A stretch of 64,000 nucleotides of DNA from assembly GCA_023334545.1 (NCBI GenBank), contig JAADVB010000011.1, forward strand, positions 83,609-147,608. The letters run 5' to 3'. Below the pieces are notes generated by a model. The model searched no databases. It saw only the letters and a program-made list of their open reading frames with translations, and was not told the origin of the DNA. This document shows positions 3,167-10,918 of the stretch, piece by piece (the first letter of the stretch is position 1; the number at the start of each line of letters is the position of its first letter). Source of the DNA: Salisapilia sapeloensis CBS 127946 (lineage: Eukaryota > Protista > Oomycota). Both the position numbers and the translations under genes were made by a program.

Positions 3167-5281
3167 ATGGCCTCACTCTTTCCGTTCGTCGAGAAGAACT
3201 TCAAGCCAACGATTAATGCCACCATCGAGAGAGAACTTCGCTTCCTTGGACAGTCTCGTATCGATGCACTCACGGCGGACTACGATATGGCTCTCGTAAA
3301 AGAGAAAAAGGGTCTACAGGTATACGAACATGATGAAGATGAGCTTCTTACCTTGAAAAGCGTCGTGATCGTACCTGGCCAAGTCTCGGACGTTATGGAA
3401 ATGCTCAAGATGAGTACTTCTCAGGCCCTTCGGGATACCATGGGTGAAATATTCGGCGCTCTGTTTCTCGATGGAAGTGTCCTCCACTCGTCCAAAGATG
3501 GTTCCTTCCGACGAAACGAATGCCTTTCAGTGAATTGGATCGCTCTTCAGTCAGCTAAGCCTCATCTTCCGCACCGCGACTACGTGTTTTTGCAATATGG
3601 AGATTCCTTCCGTCGCAATTCGGACGCTGGACGAGGGCAGCTTACGGGTGCTCTTATCTGGGAATCCATCGAGCTAGACACTTGCGTTCCATTACCTCCC
3701 TCTCAAAACGTTGCTCGACTCAAGTTCCGTCGTTCTGGATTTGTCGTCGAAGAGCTTCCTAACAATGATGAAAGTTGCCGAGTATCTTTCATCTTGTCGG
3801 AGGCTCATCCTGGTAGATTGACTGTCTCGAACGTCACGAAGACTTGGATGCTGAAAATGGTCAGCAGTGTGGTCGAAATGGAAAGCGCGATTGTTGGACG
3901 TGCACTAGCTTCCCAAAATTTGCTCACGAAAAAGCAGTTTACTAAGGACAGTGACATCTGCACGCTGTGCAACAAGTCGTTCTCCGTGTTCCGTCGTAAG
4001 CACCACTGTCGTGTTTGTGGCGAAGTTTGCTGCAGCAAATGCAGTGAGCTGAAAGTTGTCAAGAAGCAAGGATTGTCTAACGAAGTGCGTGTGTGCTGCC
4101 AATGCCGCTCCAGCTCCATGTCTAGTAGTCTACGCTCTTCCAGCAGCAAATCGAGCGTTGATGCTCCATACAAGATGTCAGGATCCGCCTATTCGACTGG
4201 TAGTGCAAGTCAATCCTACTCTTATGATGATAACTCAAGGGAACACCTCCATCACGCAAGTATGGGAAGCTCGTACTCCAGCGACCACGCGCGAGTGAAG
4301 GCACACCCTCCACCGATGCAAGGGCATTCTGTATCGTCGGCATCTTCCAGCAAGATGAGGCAAACACCCGAGGCCTATCACCCCTTGACCAAGTCCAGCG
4401 TTTCAACCTCATCTTCTACTTCCTCTGACATGATCTTACTGAATTCGTCGAAGCATGAATCGTTCGACGACACCTATGGTGACGGCCAGGGTGAATACGA
4501 CCTTGCAGCCGTTGCGGAAGATCGTGCGTCTCAGGAACACCCTCATGTATTTGAAAACACAGGCTTCAGCTATGCGCTGAACTACTCTAGCCGTCAGGAT
4601 TGGCCACGTGCTCCATTGCCATTAAATGAGCCCGCTCGATTGCACAAAGTGAAGGAGTTGCATCTAGCTGATCCCGGCAAGCAGTTCCAGGACATGTGCG
4701 AGTATGTAGCAGCTGAAATGGGATGCTCGATGGCAAGTCTGACGTTTGTCGGTGAAAAATGTGGATTCCTTATGGCCTCCATCGGCGTGGGAAAGAAGGA
4801 AATGTCGCGAGACTTACTACTTGAAGCCCACGTCATCATGGACGAATCTCCAACCATTGTGCTCGATGCGTCGGAAGAGGTTCGCTTTGTCAACAACCCA
4901 GCCGTGAAGAGCGGTCAAATCCGATTCTTTGCTGGATTTCCACTTGTGACGGCAGATGGCTTCATCGTCGGTTCATTAAGCGTGGCGGATCCGTTTGCGC
5001 GAGAGAATTTGGACGGAGAGAAAGTGACCTTCTTGAAAAAGCTTTCGGAAGCAGCTATCAAGGCCGTGGAGCAAAACACGAATGCGCAGATTCAGCAGAG
5101 TCAGGCGCTAACCGTTACTGGGCAAGGAAGCAACATTGTCAACACTGACACCGGGATGCCTCCGCCACCACCATCGCCGGATTACTCTTACGTCGATGCG
5201 CAACAAAGAATGCAGCAGTTACTCCAGACTGCTTACTCAACCCAATGTCAGGTGCGCATGCAAGTGAATCCGCTCATCTAA
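3167..5281 (+). CDS. START-like + FYVE zinc finger + GAF domain protein (oomycete-type), intronless, 704 aa
   Basis: FYVE motif CTLCNKSFSVFRRKHHCRVCGEVCCSKC...RVCCQC (about 3958-4105). GAF motif PLPLNEPARL...RFFAGFPLVTADGFIVGSLSVAD (about 4610-4990). N-terminal START-like region includes RDYVFLQY. Confidence 0.85.
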   Translation: MASLFPFVEKNFKPTINATIERELRFLGQSRIDALTADYDMALVKEKKGLQVYEHDEDELLTLKSVVIVPGQVSDVMEMLKMSTSQALRDTMGEIFGALFLDGSVLHSSKDGSFRRNECLSVNWIALQSAKPHLPHRDYVFLQYGDSFRRNSDAGRGQLTGALIWESIELDTCVPLPPSQNVARLKFRRSGFVVEELPNNDESCRVSFILSEAHPGRLTVSNVTKTWMLKMVSSVVEMESAIVGRALASQNLLTKKQFTKDSDICTLCNKSFSVFRRKHHCRVCGEVCCSKCSELKVVKKQGLSNEVRVCCQCRSSSMSSSLRSSSSKSSVDAPYKMSGSAYSTGSASQSYSYDDNSREHLHHASMGSSYSSDHARVKAHPPPMQGHSVSSASSSKMRQTPEAYHPLTKSSVSTSSSTSSDMILLNSSKHESFDDTYGDGQGEYDLAAVAEDRASQEHPHVFENTGFSYALNYSSRQDWPRAPLPLNEPARLHKVKELHLADPGKQFQDMCEYVAAEMGCSMASLTFVGEKCGFLMASIGVGKKEMSRDLLLEAHVIMDESPTIVLDASEEVRFVNNPAVKSGQIRFFAGFPLVTADGFIVGSLSVADPFARENLDGEKVTFLKKLSEAAIKAVEQNTNAQIQQSQALTVTGQGSNIVNTDTGMPPPPPSPDYSYVDAQQRMQQLLQTAYSTQCQVRMQVNPLI

Positions 5282-6059: not shown

Positions 6060-7189
6060 GGCTCCTTGGTTTTGATTTCGGCGGTTCGTGTTCACATATT
6101 TTCGTACCTAGTGGTGTCTACTATTGTCCCAAATGATTCGAGACGATGTGGAGTTTTTCTAGACCACAATATAGTGACATGGTCACAGAAGTCAGGGTTT
6201 TCTGCTAGCCCACGTGTTTGTATCGGAGACTAAGTTACTATGTATCTTGAACGTGCGGGAGCTTGTCGACACTTAATAGGATGCGGTGAGTCTCGGACCC
6301 AGCGTGAGGGCGAGCTCCCTTCTCAATCTGAGCTGCTTTCGATTCTGTCGTGGCTCAATATTTGCAACATAGAAGGGCAAAATAGCCATCAGTCTCAGTT
6401 TAGGGCTGAATAGTAACCTTTTCTAATTACACACAAAATGCCATAGTGATATTTTAGACACGAAAGGAACTTGGCTCACCAAGTTGTGTCTATGGAGAAG
6501 CCATTTCTGAAAAGCTACATTCATTGTAATGATCTTGGCGAATGTTATTTATGGTTATTATCATCTATTTTTTTCGCTACGCAGTATGTTGCTGTGCTTA
6601 TTATAATCCAGATCTACTTTACCGCATTATGTGAATGTGCAACTTGAAGTTTTGTCGTCTACAACTTACTCTTCGTCTTCTTCCTCATCTATAGTAATAT
6701 GCGCATTACATTTGTACTTTCGCGACAGTCTAATCTTTGAAAGAATCCTCCAATTCGCTGGCGTTCTTCTCAATTCTAACTTAGTCGTCTCTGCTTCGTC
6801 CAATATCCATTTCTATCCTGGATAGAAACATCCGCAACGATGTGTAGACGGCAGGATACTTTTTAATCCAGTGCGCTATCCGATTGTAGCATCGTGTCTT
6901 CGATTGCTTTATCGTCAAGTACTAAACTGTCATACTTACTGATATGGTCACCGCTCTCTCCAAGAACGGATAATGTACCCACATGAAATGAAAAGTATAG
7001 TGATCACCTAGGTTACTATCTAAGCCAGACACTCGGATCTTCATCTTGTAAAGATACTACATATCCACATTGAGAAGATAAATATAACTCTAATCTACTC
7101 TTCATTCGTCAGACCTTGTTTATCCATTACTAGCCGAGTATGCAAATAGAAAGTGTATTGCAAGTCCGATTTCGATCTTTATTCTCGTT

Positions 7190-10100
7190 CTATGCATCCA
7201 TCGACACGGGTGACTCCGATCTCCTATCCGATGACGATGAATCCTTCACGTCCTCCGACTCGTCACTTTCCTCCTTCTTGTCTTTTGTACTCGTCGTTGG
7301 CTGCCTCGATATCGTCACCTCCACTTTCTCCAACTGATCACTCAAACTCTGCTGCAGTTTCTTCATCTCATCTCGGAACGTCTCGCTGTCTCGCATCAAC
7401 TTGCCGCCATTCTCGACAAACGACGACAACGGCGTGCCTTCATCCGTCATCGTCAAATCATGACTCTGCGCTCGGTCCTTGGACGCACGAACGCCGCCAA
7501 ACGATGGTCGAGGCTGGAACGACGGCTCATCGTAGCTATGATTCCGCACGCGCTCTTCTTCCGACACCTTGGGGACTTTCGGAAGACTCTCAATCTTCTC
7601 CTTCGCGAGCTCATGCACATCCGCCGGCGCCTTCTCCTCTTCTGCACTAGCCTCTTGCTCCGATTCGGAGAATTGCTGTCCTTGACTCACTTCCTGCGTC
7701 TCCGTCTCCTTCGTCTGAGAGGTCTGAGACGCACTCGGTGACGACTGAGGACGTAGTTCCGACACGAGATGCGGTACTTGGACGAGCGCATCCGGGTCTT
7801 CGCAGTAGTACGTAAAGTCCTTAAACGTCGGGTCTTGCACTGGTGGCGTAGACCCTTGCATCCGACTGCCAACAAGAGACAAGAAACCCTTCGAGCGATT
7901 AGCTGAACGTTCCGTCGGTGACTGCACTTCCCGATGGACATCCAAATCCGTGAACTCTGCATCGACATACTGGACATCGACCGACGAATTCAGCTTGGGT
8001 TTCCATGGTGGCGTCGCTTTCTTTAGTAGCAACTTATCCCAGTCGACGCTCTTAAAGTACGGATGCGACAGAATGTCACTGATGTTCGTACCCAGTCTCT
8101 TCGTCGGGTCTTTCTGTAAAAAGTTATGCAGAATGTCCTTCAAGTCAGAAGACAGCTCTGGTTTATCTGGGAATTGCAGTGGTTCCTTTTGAATGCGACT
8201 GTACATCTTCTCAATGTTATGATCATAGAACGGAGACTTGCCGACGCTCATTTCGTACAACAAGATACCGAGACTCCACCAGTCCGCTGCTTTGCCGTAC
8301 GACCGCTTGGCCTTTGGGAGCAAGAGCTCGGGTGCAGTGTACTGGGGAGACCCCGCCATGGTCTTGGCGCCACGAAAGTCCGACACGTGCAGCTTGGCTA
8401 AACCAAAGTCGACGAGTGCGATGTGCCCGTCGGCATCGATCATCACATTCTCTGGCTTAATGTCTCGGTACAAGATATCATGCTGATGCAAGTGGTGGAT
8501 GGCGAGGACGAGTTCGGCCGTGTAAAAGTGCGCTCGATCCGACGGGATGCGACAGGATGCACCTTTGCTCATGTGGTGGAAGAGGTCCCCACCGCTATAG
8601 TAGCTCATACCTAAAAAGAGTTTCGTGCGCGACTGGAAAGCGATGCGTAGACCAGCAATGAACGGATGGTGGACGTTCTGCGCCACACGCATCTCCGTGA
8701 AGGAGCTTTCAATGTCGTACTTGGTCATTTTGCCCTTCTCCAAGATCTTGAGCGCGTAGATCTGACCGTCGCTCTTTTTTACGGCGTTCACGACCGTACC
8801 AAAGCCTCCCTTGCCAATCACATTGTACACGGTAAAGTCCTTGAGAGAAATCGACAGCGATCGAGTGGATCGGAAGGCGGCGTCCGACATCTCGCTGTAC
8901 GGATTGCGCGCATCTAACGGCCGCCACGTGCCCGTCGCCATCTTCTGATCGACATCGACACGAAGACGGAGGATACGTCCGTACGGTCCAAGGCGAATGC
9001 GATGGCTGAAGGGATGGTAGACGGTCGTGCCAGTGAGTTTGCTCTTCACCTTTTCATGTCCTTTGACAAAGATCTGCTTTCCCTCTGCGTCCTTCGTCAC
9101 GTCGTTCACGGAGAACTCTAAAAGCTCAAAGTTTTGCGTAAAAGCGCCGAGGAAATGCATCAAACCTTCTCGACCAAAGTAGTCGCCTGTGAATTGCATC
9201 GCTTTCGGGTAATTCGACGTGAAGACGAGATCTTTGTTAAAGTAAGCAAAGAGCTCGTACAGAGCAGACTTGTCGCCGTTCATCAGACGCTTGTACACGT
9301 CATAAGCAGTCGTCGTGCGCATGTCTGGCTTAGCGTCGTAGCGATACCGGTTGTAGAGCGGTTTGCTGTTATTCCGCATGTTGCTCGCATCGACACCGGC
9401 TTCGAGGAAGTAAACCCACGCGAGCTGGTCCACTTCCGTAGGGACAGAACAGTGGAAGACCTTGCCTTCGGTTGTTTCGAAGCGAAAGTCAAAGGCATTG
9501 CTACTACGTTGCTCTTCCTTCTTGACACTCGCGACGTTCACGCGTCCTTTAAGATGACTCCGGTTCTGTGCGTCCACCTTGTGTTCATAATCTACGTCTA
9601 CGATAAGTACAAGATAGATCGAGGTAGTCCAAGAAGCTTACAGGAAAGAAGATTGCCTTCCAACGTGAAGAACCTCGCTTTCCAATTACGCACGAGGTGT
9701 CCTCGCTTCGTCACGTAGCCTTCCCACTCGACGATCGGGAGATCAAATGCCTCCAACGCGTTTTCGTCGCTGCTCGTGGGTGTGCTCGTGCCGTCCTTGT
9801 CATGACGTGCTTGTCGCTGACTGTTGCGGGCACTCTGATGTCCGTTCGTAGAGTTTCTAGCGGACAATTGGCGTAATGAATTCACGAAAGCGTTGCCACG
9901 TTGTCCGAACTGTGGCTTGTTCTTCTGTCCGAAGCGCCCACTGAACGAATTCGTTCGTTTATGCGCGTTTTGCTTGGCCTGACTCGCAGGTGAGTTCGGA
10001 CTGATTTTGCCCAAACTGACCGTCGACCGCTGCTTTGCACTTTCATCTTCTTCCGAGGGAGACGGTAGCGACGTAAATTTCTTTTCGTTTTCAGCCTTCT

Positions 10101-10284
10101 GCGCGTCTTGCTTGGCCATGGTGCTCAAGGACGTCGCGGACGCTGACGTAGGAAAATTAGGCGCCTCGTTTAACTTTTTGTGCGCAACGTGGCCCTGCTG
10201 GTCGACGGCTCCACTGCTTTCGACGCGCCGCATGCCATTTTCAGGGTCTTTCGGGTCTTCCTCTCGGCTAATTTCGGCACCCAT
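7190..10284 (-). CDS. AGC-family Ser/Thr kinase with N-myristoylation motif, PH domain and SnoaL/NTF2-like domain; one 50-nt intron (9592-9641)
   Basis: MGAEIS start. PH domain WEGYVTKRGHLVRNWKARFFTLEGNLLS|YY...DQLAWVYFL is joined across a GT-AG intron. Kinase motifs: IGKGGFGTV, YALKIL, YRDIKPEN, DFG, APE. The AGC tail has PPWKP and the hydrophobic motif FKDFTY. Confidence 0.9.
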
Positions 10285-10594
10285 GTTCGTGGTCGGTCGC
10301 AAGAGTTCGGTGCACGGAAGAAAGGAAGAGAGTGGGTGTACGAATTATATGTGAGAGACGTAGCGAGAATAAATGTGTGACTTTGTAGAGCAAAGGCAGG
10401 TGGTCTCGGTGACGTATCGTAAATCCTTTTGCTTGCTCACGATGATCGATTACACGCCCCCAGTCCGGAGCTCGAGGAACGGTCTAACGTTATGCTACTG
10501 CAGGTGCACACGTCTTTTCTGCCAATCATGCGCTCGTTTTTCGATTTTCGACCAATACAACACAGACTAAGATCCAGTCTGCACACTACGAGGC

Positions 10595-10918
10595 ATGTCG
10601 AAGCGATCGTATTTTGTTGGTGCCGCGCTCGCTGGTATTGCCGGCACGTCTCTCGCGAGCGTGTCCGTACTCATGTATATCAGGTTTGCCGATCCGCAAG
10701 AGTTTGCGGACGGAACGATCCGAGCTTCCAATCCGGAAGTCACGGACGCTTTTAATCGCAAATGGGGCGTCTACGGCACGGGCATCTTTGACTCGATCCC
10801 ACAATCGATTAAAGACTTTTTCGTGATCCCGGACATGGCGGAGAAAATCAAGGAACAGAACCGCAAGCGGGAGCAACAGATACAACAAACGATTGAAGAT
10901 CTTCGACCCAAGAAATAA
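10595..10918 (+). CDS. Small hypothetical single-pass membrane protein, 107 aa
   Basis: ATG-started ORF with an N-terminal hydrophobic helix (YFVGAALAGIAGTSLASVSVLMYI) and a C-terminal coil. It has protein-like composition and lies divergent from the AGC kinase. No family recognised. Confidence 0.6.
   Translation: MSKRSYFVGAALAGIAGTSLASVSVLMYIRFADPQEFADGTIRASNPEVTDAFNRKWGVYGTGIFDSIPQSIKDFFVIPDMAEKIKEQNRKREQQIQQTIEDLRPKK

What the first reader, a model, noticed from the sequence alone, without database searches (positions are those of the whole stretch)
7190..10284. Akt-like kinase with a SnoaL/NTF2-like pocket domain inserted between PH and kinase domains
Seen: between the PH domain and the AGC kinase (about 8950-9310) lies a ~120-aa segment, AYDVYKRLMNGDKSALYELFAYFNKDLVF...FTGDYFGREGLMHFLGAFTQNFELLEFSVNDVT...IFVKGHEKVKSKLTGTTVYHPFSHRIRLGPYGRILRLRVDVD. 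It follows the pattern of bacterial SnoaL/ketosteroid-isomerase-like proteins (G.Y.G..g...F, G...v....TG, H....G.I). The protein also starts with a canonical myristoylation motif (MGAEIS), keeps the AGC hydrophobic motif FKDFTY, and has TMAGSP rather than TFCGTP in the activation loop. Established: Akt/PKB has only a short PH-kinase linker, and NTF2-fold domains bind hydrophobic ligands. Inference: a membrane-tethered kinase gated by both phosphoinositides and a small hydrophobic ligand such as a sterol or host metabolite, possibly built from a bacterial-type domain. I do not know of a described kinase with this architecture.
Basis: partly seen in the sequence, partly recalled or inferred. Interest (0 to 1): 0.72.

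Follow-up and report, generated by a model that had tools for sequence, protein, structure and literature searches.

The report
Oomycete Akt-like kinase with PH–SnoaL cassette

Summary
The minus strand holds a two-exon gene for a 1014-aa protein. Transcript contigs of three runs skip exactly 9592-9641 (GT..AG). The domain order is MGAEIS myristoylation motif, low-complexity linker, PH, a ~125-aa domain, Akt/SGK-like AGC kinase (T-loop KTMAGSP, hydrophobic motif FKDFTY), and an acidic/Ser-rich tail.

The inserted domain is a SnoaL_2-type NTF2-like cone:
- An oomycete-only profile finds stand-alone prokaryotic SnoaL_2 / "ketosteroid isomerase-like" proteins (E down to 8e-9 among 1.8 billion proteins).
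- hhalign gives probability 99.6%.
- The reverse search, with the bacterial profile, hits the window domain at 2.8e-22.

This is not a one-off insertion. This genome carries the PH–SnoaL_2 cassette on at least two AGC kinases and four MAP kinases. Every named eukaryotic hit is an oomycete, and all oomycete copies lie on one side of a 98%-supported branch. In one MAPK lineage the domain is 89-96% identical across oomycetes, more conserved than the kinase domain.

Gating by a sterol or host metabolite remains untested, and the pocket could not be measured. No paper found describes the domain. First readers of this scan flagged it on other pieces of this genome.

The parts
7166..10400 (-). Transcribed region (mRNA about 3.2 kb). 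The transcript contig runs about 53 nt beyond 10400, to roughly 10453, and its 3' end lies at about 7166.
   Evidence: X1 contig of 3241 nt and X3 contig of 3560 nt lie on 7166/7100..9591 and 9642..10400 with 0-3 differences.
9642..10284 (-). Coding exon 1 (214 codons plus the first base of a split Tyr codon).
10267..10284 (-). N-myristoylation consensus M-G-A-E-I-S at the first AUG.
   Evidence: MGAE[LI]S begins 22 of the 29 retrieved orthologs.
9739..10266 (-). Ser/Ala/Asn/Gln/Lys-rich low-complexity linker of about 176 aa.
9643..9738 (-). PH domain, N-terminal part. Its beta1-beta2 region reads K-R-G-x6-K-x-R, the basic motif typical of 3-phosphoinositide binders.
   Evidence: For the complete PH domain of an ortholog, the closest solved PH domains are DAPP1, myosin X, TAPP1, Akt and Grp1.
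9592..9641 (-). 50-nt GT..AG intron.
   Evidence: The joint is present in contigs of 3 runs and the spliced reading is colinear with orthologs.
7190..9591 (-). Coding exon 2, including the stop codon at 7190-7192.
9386..9591 (-). PH domain, C-terminal part, ending …WVYFLEAGVDA.
8942..9316 (-). SnoaL_2-type NTF2-like domain (exon-2 residues 88-212). The modelled and searched stretch was 8933-9322.
8837..8941 (-). Conserved linker of about 35 aa between the SnoaL_2 domain and the kinase.
   Evidence: 60-75% identity to orthologs (54% to Albugo).
8045..8836 (-). AGC protein kinase catalytic domain. The Gly loop GKGGFG, the Lys of YALK, YRDIKPEN and DFG are all intact.
   Evidence: Akt2 1.3e-79, then Akt1, SGK1, S6K..
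8327..8365 (-). Activation segment KTMAGSPQYTAPE. The Thr codon at 8360-8362 aligns with the position of the PDK1-site Thr of Akt.
   Evidence: The equivalence to Akt Thr308 rests on motif position, which is an inference.
7808..7825 (-). AGC hydrophobic motif F-K-D-F-T-Y.
7193..7807 (-). Ser/Glu/Lys/Asp-rich C-terminal tail, poorly conserved.
   Evidence: 21-27% identity to orthologs.

Best explanation
The locus encodes an expressed, catalytically intact oomycete Akt/SGK-like AGC kinase of 1014 aa. Its regulatory half is a myristoylation signal followed by a PH–SnoaL_2 cassette. Shown here: the 125-aa domain is a genuine SnoaL_2-type NTF2-like cone; its nearest non-oomycete relatives are stand-alone prokaryotic SnoaL_2 proteins; all oomycete copies lie on one side of a well-supported branch, which fits a single origin; the domain always directly follows a PH domain; and the cassette precedes both AGC and MAP kinases. 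Inferred: myristate plus the PH domain hold the kinase at a phosphoinositide-bearing membrane. The SnoaL_2 domain acts as a cis-regulatory pocket domain. Either occupancy of its conserved polar-lined pocket (Y7, D31, E90, W/F105, H107, D125 in domain numbering) by a small hydrophobic molecule, or its docking against the PH or kinase lobes, decides whether the activation-loop Thr and the FKDFTY motif can be phosphorylated. A fused SnoaL_2 domain controls ECF41-type sigma factors in a comparable way.
For: Gene model and expression.
Akt-like kinase. Conserved MGAE[LI]S, T-loop and hydrophobic motif.
PH domain nearest to 3-phosphoinositide-binding PH domains.
SnoaL_2 identity:
- An oomycete-only profile found 88 hits at E<=1e-3 among 1.84 billion representatives. 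These include ~130-aa proteins named ketosteroid-isomerase-like or NTF2 family and carrying PF12680 in prokaryotic gene neighbourhoods.
- hhalign probability 99.6%, E 2e-24.
- The bacterial-only profile hits the window domain at 2.8e-22, its best match in the genome.
Family-wide conservation of Y7, D31, E90, H107 and D125 from bacteria to oomycete kinases.
Cassette on six kinases of this genome.
Strong constraint: in the L005-type MAPK the domain is 89-96% identical across Peronosporales, Albugo and Saprolegniales, above the kinase domain's 82-89%.
A single supported branch (98% SH-aLRT) separates all oomycete copies from the stand-alone proteins.
Against: No cavity could be computed, because model coordinates are not exposed. 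That the conserved polar residues line the pocket is inferred from the usual NTF2 topology.
The closest solved relatives (3dm8, 3ebt, 3fgy, 3ec9) have no known ligand or function.
In this Akt-type lineage the domain evolves faster (51-60% identity; 43% to Albugo) than the PH domain (60-74%) or the kinase (88-92%; 75% to Albugo).
The window copy has Q at the near-universal Pro43 and F at Trp105.
A second AGC paralogue (L004) has a strongly degenerate copy.
No interdomain contact was modelled.
Confidence: 0.5

Rival explanations
1. The SnoaL_2 domain is a dimerisation or oligomerisation module. Like the NTF2-fold hub of CaMKII, or the dimers that many bacterial SnoaL-like proteins form, it would bring two kinase molecules together for trans-phosphorylation. 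The pocket would play no part.
For: An NTF2-fold domain serving as a kinase assembly hub has a precedent in the CaMKII association domain (own knowledge). Many of the top structural matches were deposited with several chains. The cassette works with two unrelated kinase classes, which fits a generic assembly role.
Against: No positive evidence was obtained here. The polar residues conserved across the family are not explained by an interface on the sheet face.
Confidence: 0.2
2. The domain is a structural extension of the PH domain, forming a PH–NTF2 supramodule. It would shape membrane binding or provide the autoinhibitory surface that the PH domain alone supplies in metazoan Akt, and would bind no small molecule.
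For: The domain is never seen in oomycetes without a PH domain immediately upstream. The PH domains of the Akt-type and MAPK-type cassettes are themselves similar (39-43% identity in BLAST pieces), so the pair was duplicated as a unit. The flanking linkers are short and conserved. The Akt-type-specific invariant residues cluster in the beta1-alpha3 loop motif Y-P-K…G-D-Y-F-G-R-E-G..H-F.
Against: The residues shared with stand-alone bacterial proteins (D31, E90, H107, D125) are retained although those proteins have no PH partner. No interdomain model was made.
Confidence: 0.2
3. The domain is still an enzyme (an isomerase, cyclase, dehydratase or epoxide hydrolase of the SnoaL/KSI/LEH type) fused to kinases.
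For: The structural neighbours include enzymes: TerC, KSI, LEH, SdnG and XimE. Conserved Tyr, Asp, Glu and His residues occupy the elements that carry catalytic residues in KSI-like enzymes (the positional analogy is my own inference).
Against: A small-molecule enzyme fused to six signalling kinases has no obvious rationale. The window copy has lost two family-wide residues. No match to any characterised enzyme subfamily rises above the matches to proteins of unknown function.
Confidence: 0.05
4. The domain is an artefact: a bacterial contaminant, a mis-assembled contig, or a wrong gene model joining unrelated ORFs.
For: None, beyond the bacterial affinity of the domain.
Against: The domain lies in one uninterrupted 795-codon frame together with the PH C-half and the kinase. 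Transcript contigs of independent runs cover the whole mRNA. The same colinear architecture occurs in 29 proteins from many oomycete genera.
Confidence: 0.01

Closest known systems
Metazoan Akt/PKB (and SGK) AGC kinases
   Same: An N-terminal PH domain with the K-x-G…K/R-x-R basic motif. A kinase domain that matches Akt2 best (1.3e-79). An activation-loop Thr and the F-x-x-F-S/T-Y hydrophobic motif.
   Different: A myristoylation motif and a 176-aa low-complexity leader. A folded 125-aa SnoaL_2 domain plus linkers lie between the PH domain and the kinase, where Akt has a short linker. The T-loop reads TMAGSP rather than TFCGTP. There is a ~200-aa acidic/Ser-rich tail. Orthology to metazoan Akt was not tested.
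Stand-alone prokaryotic SnoaL_2 (PF12680) / 'ketosteroid isomerase-like' NTF2-family proteins, e.g. PDB 3fgy, 3ebt, 3ec9, 3grd, 3dm8; TerC
   Different: Those are single-domain proteins of ~130 aa in bacterial operon-like contexts, mostly of unknown function. Here the domain is embedded in eukaryotic signalling kinases and always lies downstream of a PH domain.
CaMKII association (hub) domain
   Same: An NTF2-fold domain covalently attached to a Ser/Thr kinase (own knowledge).
   Different: The CaMKII hub is C-terminal, belongs to another NTF2 family, and forms 12-14-mers. Here the domain is N-terminal to the kinase and of the SnoaL_2 type, and its oligomeric state is unknown.
ECF41/SigJ-type sigma factors with a fused SnoaL_2 extension
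   Same: A SnoaL_2 domain fused in cis to a signalling protein, where it regulates activity by intramolecular contact (own knowledge, not checked here).
   Different: Those are bacterial, C-terminal fusions that regulate a sigma factor, with no PH domain and no kinase.
PH + lipid-pocket proteins (OSBP PH–ORD, CERT PH–START)
   Same: A phosphoinositide-binding PH domain followed by a hydrophobic-pocket domain. That logic is the basis of the dual-input reading.
   Different: Those use different pocket folds, are lipid-transfer proteins rather than kinases, and no homology is implied.
Oomycete PH-bearing MAP kinases (the 'novel group' that includes PsSAK1 of Phytophthora sojae)
   Same: The same PH–SnoaL_2 cassette is found in this genome's MAPK paralogues and their orthologues. 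PMC3386981 calls PsSAK1 a novel group of MAPKs.
   Different: These have a CMGC/MAPK catalytic domain with a C2-like middle region instead of an AGC kinase. That PsSAK1 itself is one of these proteins rests on my memory of its PH domain and was not verified here.

Membership tests
NTF2-like superfamily, SnoaL_2-type (Pfam PF12680 neighbourhood) | Alpha+beta cone fold: three helices packed on a curved 5-6-stranded sheet. | tested here: met
NTF2-like superfamily, SnoaL_2-type (Pfam PF12680 neighbourhood) | Significant sequence-profile similarity to recognised family members. | tested here: met
   The oomycete-only profile hits stand-alone proteins at 8e-9 to 1e-4 in a library of 1.84 billion. 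These are named KSI-like or NTF2 family and carry PF12680. hhalign probability 99.6%. The reverse search gives 2.8e-22.
NTF2-like superfamily, SnoaL_2-type (Pfam PF12680 neighbourhood) | A direct hit of the Pfam SnoaL_2 model on the protein itself. | tested here: inconclusive
   The precomputed Pfam lists of the 29 Akt-type and 54 MAPK-type oomycete proteins show only PH and kinase families, so the domain lies below Pfam's own threshold. Pfam could not be run on the window sequence with these tools.
NTF2-like superfamily, SnoaL_2-type (Pfam PF12680 neighbourhood) | An open hydrophobic cavity lined by a few polar residues. | not testable with these tools
Only the conservation of Y7, D31, E90, H107 and D125 is known.
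Akt/PKB-type AGC kinase | An AGC catalytic domain closest to Akt, with intact catalytic motifs. | tested here: met
   Top PDB hits are Akt2 at 1.3e-79, then Akt1, SGK1 and S6K. GKGGFG, the Lys of YALK, YRDIKPEN and DFG are present.
Akt/PKB-type AGC kinase | An N-terminal PH domain of the 3-phosphoinositide-binding type. | tested here: met
   The K-R-G-x6-K-x-R motif is present. The orthologue's PH domain is closest to DAPP1, TAPP1, Akt and Grp1. Lipid binding itself was not tested.
Akt/PKB-type AGC kinase | An activation-loop Thr and the C-terminal hydrophobic motif F-x-x-F-S/T-Y. | tested here: met
   KTMAGSPQYTAPE and FKDFTY are present in the window and conserved in the orthologues.
Akt/PKB-type AGC kinase | A short unstructured PH-to-kinase linker. 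| tested here: not met
   About 180 residues, including a folded SnoaL_2 domain, separate the PH domain from the kinase.
Akt/PKB-type AGC kinase | Orthology to metazoan Akt in a kinase tree. | not tested
   No AGC phylogeny was built. Sources label the orthologues 'AGC/AKT' or 'RAC family'.
N-myristoylated proteins | M-G-x-x-x-S/T at the true N-terminus. | tested here: met
   MGAEIS sits at the first AUG of the transcript, and MGAE[LI]S begins 22 of the 29 retrieved orthologues. The modification itself cannot be tested here.
CaMKII-hub-like oligomerising NTF2 domains | Self-association of the domain. | tested here: inconclusive
   The self-association prediction returned no verdict. It is not evidence either way.

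The most novel reading that the evidence does not exclude
The PH–SnoaL_2 cassette is an oomycete-wide, lineage-specific coincidence detector. The PH domain reads a phosphoinositide and the SnoaL_2 pocket reads a small hydrophobic molecule, such as a sterol or another lipid cue. Many Peronosporales cannot make sterols yet need them for reproduction (own knowledge). The joint signal would feed directly into both Akt-like and MAPK pathways, making these proteins intracellular small-molecule receptor kinases of a kind not described in any eukaryote.
Probability: 0.15. Interest if true: 0.85.

Novelty: new variant of a known kind. Interest (0 to 1): 0.6.

Why it matters
Oomycetes include major crop and fish pathogens, and little is known about how their kinases are switched. 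The principal kinome survey (PMC3019232) lists their unusual accessory domains but not this one. Pfam leaves about 125 residues unannotated in at least six kinases per genome. One MAPK lineage keeps the domain at 89-96% identity from Saprolegnia to Phytophthora, tighter than its catalytic domain. That level of conservation argues for an essential function that nobody has examined. A defined, lineage-restricted pocket domain on signalling kinases can be tested directly by ligand screening, pocket mutants and structure determination. It would also be a selective handle for studying or inhibiting oomycete signalling.

Tried and rejected
- Single-sequence AF2 of the domain gave a poor model (pLDDT 55). 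It was replaced by the alignment-based model.
- phmmer of the domain against the PDB gave only a marginal match to the NTF2-like C-terminal domain of orange carotenoid protein (E 1.3).
- The oomycete-only profile against the PDB gave only chance hits on repeated TEL-SAM fusion constructs.
- NCBIfam has no model that matches the domain.
- The TerC structural paper is not in the held library.
- A self-association prediction for two copies of the domain returned 'no answer' (score 0.01). I do not count it for or against dimerisation.
- Contamination or a gene-model artefact was considered and rejected.
- Exon 2 was searched by reference, and the complete PH domain was examined through an orthologue (P0002).
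Full report
**Gene model and expression**

The minus strand between about 10453 and 7166 carries one gene. A 795-codon open frame (7190-9577) and an upstream frame ending at 9598 are joined by a 50-nt GT..AG intron, 9641..9592. I first derived the splice from the reading frames. Two observations then confirmed it:
- The spliced reading …FFTLEGNLLS-YYEHKVDAQNRSHLKGRV… is colinear, residue for residue, with oomycete orthologues (…LSYYESKVDARNRSHLKGRV…).
- Assembled contigs from three public runs, two of one organism and one of a ~96%-identical relative, lie on 7166/7100..9591 and 9642..10400. Each has a joint that 'skips 50' with ends CT..AC on the plus strand.

The run type is only guessed as RNA. 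A 3.2-3.6-kb contig that lacks the intron and stops 24 nt past the stop codon is nevertheless what an mRNA looks like. The first AUG of that transcript is at 10284, with no upstream ATG. The protein has 1014 residues. Exon 2 was used by reference, and an orthologue stood in where a complete PH domain was needed.

- The protein begins MGAEIS, which fits the N-myristoylation consensus. MGAE[LI]S begins 22 of the 29 retrieved orthologues.
- A 176-aa low-complexity leader follows. The PH domain comes next, and its beta1-beta2 region reads KRGHLVRNWKARFF.
- The complete PH domain of orthologue P0002 is closest to the PH domains of DAPP1, myosin X, TAPP1, Akt3/Akt1 and Grp1. To my knowledge those are the classical 3-phosphoinositide binders. 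Lipid specificity here is therefore an inference.
- The kinase domain (exon-2 residues 248-511) matches Akt2 best (1.3e-79), then Akt1, SGK1, S6K, PKC and PKA. All catalytic motifs are intact.
- KTMAGSPQYTAPE is present in 24 of the 29 retrieved orthologues and FKDFTY in 27 of 29.
- The tail is Ser/Glu-rich and poorly conserved.

**Identity of the inserted segment**

The segment covers exon-2 residues ~88-212 (window 8942-9316). Direct sequence tests were weak:
- phmmer against the PDB gave only E 1.3 to the NTF2-like C-terminal domain of orange carotenoid protein.
- NCBIfam found nothing.
- The precomputed Pfam annotation of its orthologues lists only PH and kinase families.

A word-indexed search scored on the segment alone returned 29 proteins at 43-63% identity. 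The 25 that carry a source name are all oomycete (Globisporangium, Lagenidium, Phytophthora, Plasmopara, Hyaloperonospora, Bremia, Peronospora, Peronosclerospora, Albugo). Where named by function, they are called AGC/AKT or RAC-family kinases.

I built a profile from 19 of these (A1) and ran it against 1.84 billion representative proteins. It gave 88 hits at E<=1e-3. Besides oomycete kinases, these include many stand-alone proteins of ~130 aa at E 8e-9 to 1e-4. Their properties are:
- Those with source names are called 'ketosteroid isomerase-like protein' or 'nuclear transport factor 2 family protein'.
- Two that I looked up carry Pfam PF12680 (SnoaL_2). They sit among compact prokaryote-type genes: DNA methyltransferase, Hjc, TauE, an RND pump, EthD, and a flavin monooxygenase.
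- Profile-profile comparison of the oomycete-only alignment with an alignment of 23 stand-alone proteins gives probability 99.6%, E 2e-24, over 117 columns.
- The reverse test also holds. The stand-alone-only profile, run against this genome, finds the window domain as its best match (2.8e-22).

A mixed 83-sequence profile hits PDB NTF2-like proteins: 3fgy (8e-24), 3ebt, 3grd, 3ec9, TerC, a SnoaL-like KSI, and limonene epoxide hydrolases. A protein-language-model search independently returned only SnoaL_2/NTF2 clusters.

**Fold**

**A cassette, not a private insertion**

The domain occurs at least six times in this 22-Mb assembly. Every copy sits directly downstream of a PH domain:
- the window gene;
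- a second AGC kinase with a degenerate copy (L004);
- four MAP kinases with a C2-like middle region: L005 and L006 (the latter with a WW-like C-terminus) with TEY loops, L010 with TEY, and L009 with SEY, split by an intron.

First readers of this scan had flagged two of the MAPKs on other pieces of this genome. I reached them independently through the genome search. Every named eukaryotic hit of both searches is an oomycete, including Saprolegnia, Achlya and Aphanomyces for the MAPK type. A small clade (P0115, P0151, P0159) has the PH and SnoaL_2 domains but no detectable kinase.

In a maximum-likelihood tree of 83 domain sequences, a branch with 98% SH-aLRT support separates all stand-alone (prokaryote-type) proteins from all oomycete PH-linked copies. 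The Akt-type copies form a 95% clade. The tree has few columns and no root. It is compatible with one acquisition followed by duplication, but it does not prove the direction of transfer. The PH domains of the Akt-type and MAPK-type cassettes also resemble each other (39-43% identity in BLAST pieces). This suggests the pair moved as a unit.

**Constraint**

- In the window's lineage the domain is 51-60% identical to orthologues (43% to Albugo). That is less than the PH domain (60-74%) or the kinase (88-92%, 75% to Albugo).
- In the L005-type MAPK it is the most conserved part of the protein: 89-96% from Saprolegnia to Phytophthora, against 82-89% for the catalytic domain.
- Positions conserved from bacteria through all oomycete copies are Y7, D31, G46, G50, G53, G88, E90, W105, H107, G115 and D125, plus P43.
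- The window copy has Q43 and F105.
- Tyr on helix 1, Asp on strand 1 and polar residues on the later strands are where KSI-like proteins carry their pocket residues. That positional analogy is my inference, not a measurement.

**Mechanism**

Shown here: a membrane-targeting N-terminus (by motif), a PH domain of the phosphoinositide-binding type (by similarity), a folded SnoaL_2 domain, and an intact AGC kinase with both regulatory phospho-sites.

Inferred: the SnoaL_2 domain is a cis-regulatory element of the PH–kinase switch. It may act through occupancy of its pocket or through docking. I give this general reading about 0.5, and the specific small-molecule version about 0.15-0.2.

Rivals are a dimerisation module (0.2; the single prediction job gave no verdict), a PH-extension or autoinhibitory surface with no ligand (0.2), a still-active enzyme (0.05) and an artefact (0.01).

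**Comparison with the known, and novelty**

The kinase is Akt-like in its catalytic domain, PH domain and phospho-motifs. It fails the 'short linker' feature, and its orthology to metazoan Akt is untested. The domain belongs to the SnoaL_2 neighbourhood of the NTF2-like superfamily by profile and fold, although it lies below Pfam's own threshold. Precedents for an NTF2-fold domain on a signalling protein exist, namely the CaMKII hub and the SnoaL_2 extensions of ECF41/SigJ sigma factors (own knowledge). Their position, partners and lineage differ.

In the held literature:
- The P. infestans kinome paper enumerates novel accessory domains and notes that only six of its 20 AKT-group kinases have a recognisable PH or PX domain. 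It mentions neither NTF2 nor SnoaL.
- Searches combining SnoaL or NTF2-like with Phytophthora/oomycete, kinase and PH domain found no paper holding the SnoaL or NTF2-like term together with the oomycete term.
[quoted passage not shown] That this group is the PH–SnoaL_2 MAPK is my recollection and is unverified.

I therefore class the finding as a new variant of a known kind. The architecture is widespread in public oomycete proteomes but is unannotated, and I found no description of it.

Noticed in passing
L005:2319-5513 (-), L006:2650-6597 (-), L010:2721-6413 (+), L009:247-2989 (-): Four MAP kinases of the same genome carry the same PH–SnoaL_2 cassette, followed by a C2-like middle region. 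Three have TEY activation loops and one has SEY (that gene is split by an intron). L006 ends in a WW-like motif.
   Followed up: partly
L005:4572-4982 (-) and orthologues P0030-P0083: In this MAPK lineage the SnoaL_2 domain is 89-96% identical from Saprolegniales to Peronosporales. That exceeds the MAPK catalytic domain (82-89%) and makes it the most constrained part of the protein.
   Followed up: yes
L004:583-3132 (+): A second PH–SnoaL_2–AGC kinase paralogue (849 aa). Its SnoaL_2 copy is highly diverged, with an acidic insertion and a very long branch in the tree. It may be a degenerate pocket.
   Followed up: partly
proteins P0115, P0151, P0159 (Aphanomyces stellatus and unnamed sources): A clade of 835-1011-aa proteins with a PH domain plus the SnoaL_2-type domain but no detectable kinase domain. 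The function of the C-terminal part is unknown.
   Followed up: no
window 3167-5281 (+): A 704-aa single-exon ORF with a clear FYVE zinc-finger signature (RRKHHCRVCG…) between two other globular regions. I did not test its domains.
   Followed up: no
window 7100-10400, runs X5 and X6: Runs of a second organism (coded B) hold a ~96%-identical relative of the gene. Most differences are transitions, and the same 50-nt intron is removed in X6.
   Followed up: partly
proteins P0094 (973 aa, Leptolyngbyaceae cyanobacterium) and P0111 (2284 aa, unnamed): Large prokaryote-type or unassigned proteins with two to four copies of the same SnoaL_2 subfamily domain. The domain is therefore also used in multidomain proteins outside oomycetes.
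   Followed up: no
window 10595-10918 (+): A 107-aa ORF lying about 310 nt from the kinase start codon on the opposite strand. The kinase transcript's 5' end (about 10453) leaves only ~140 nt between the two.
   Followed up: no
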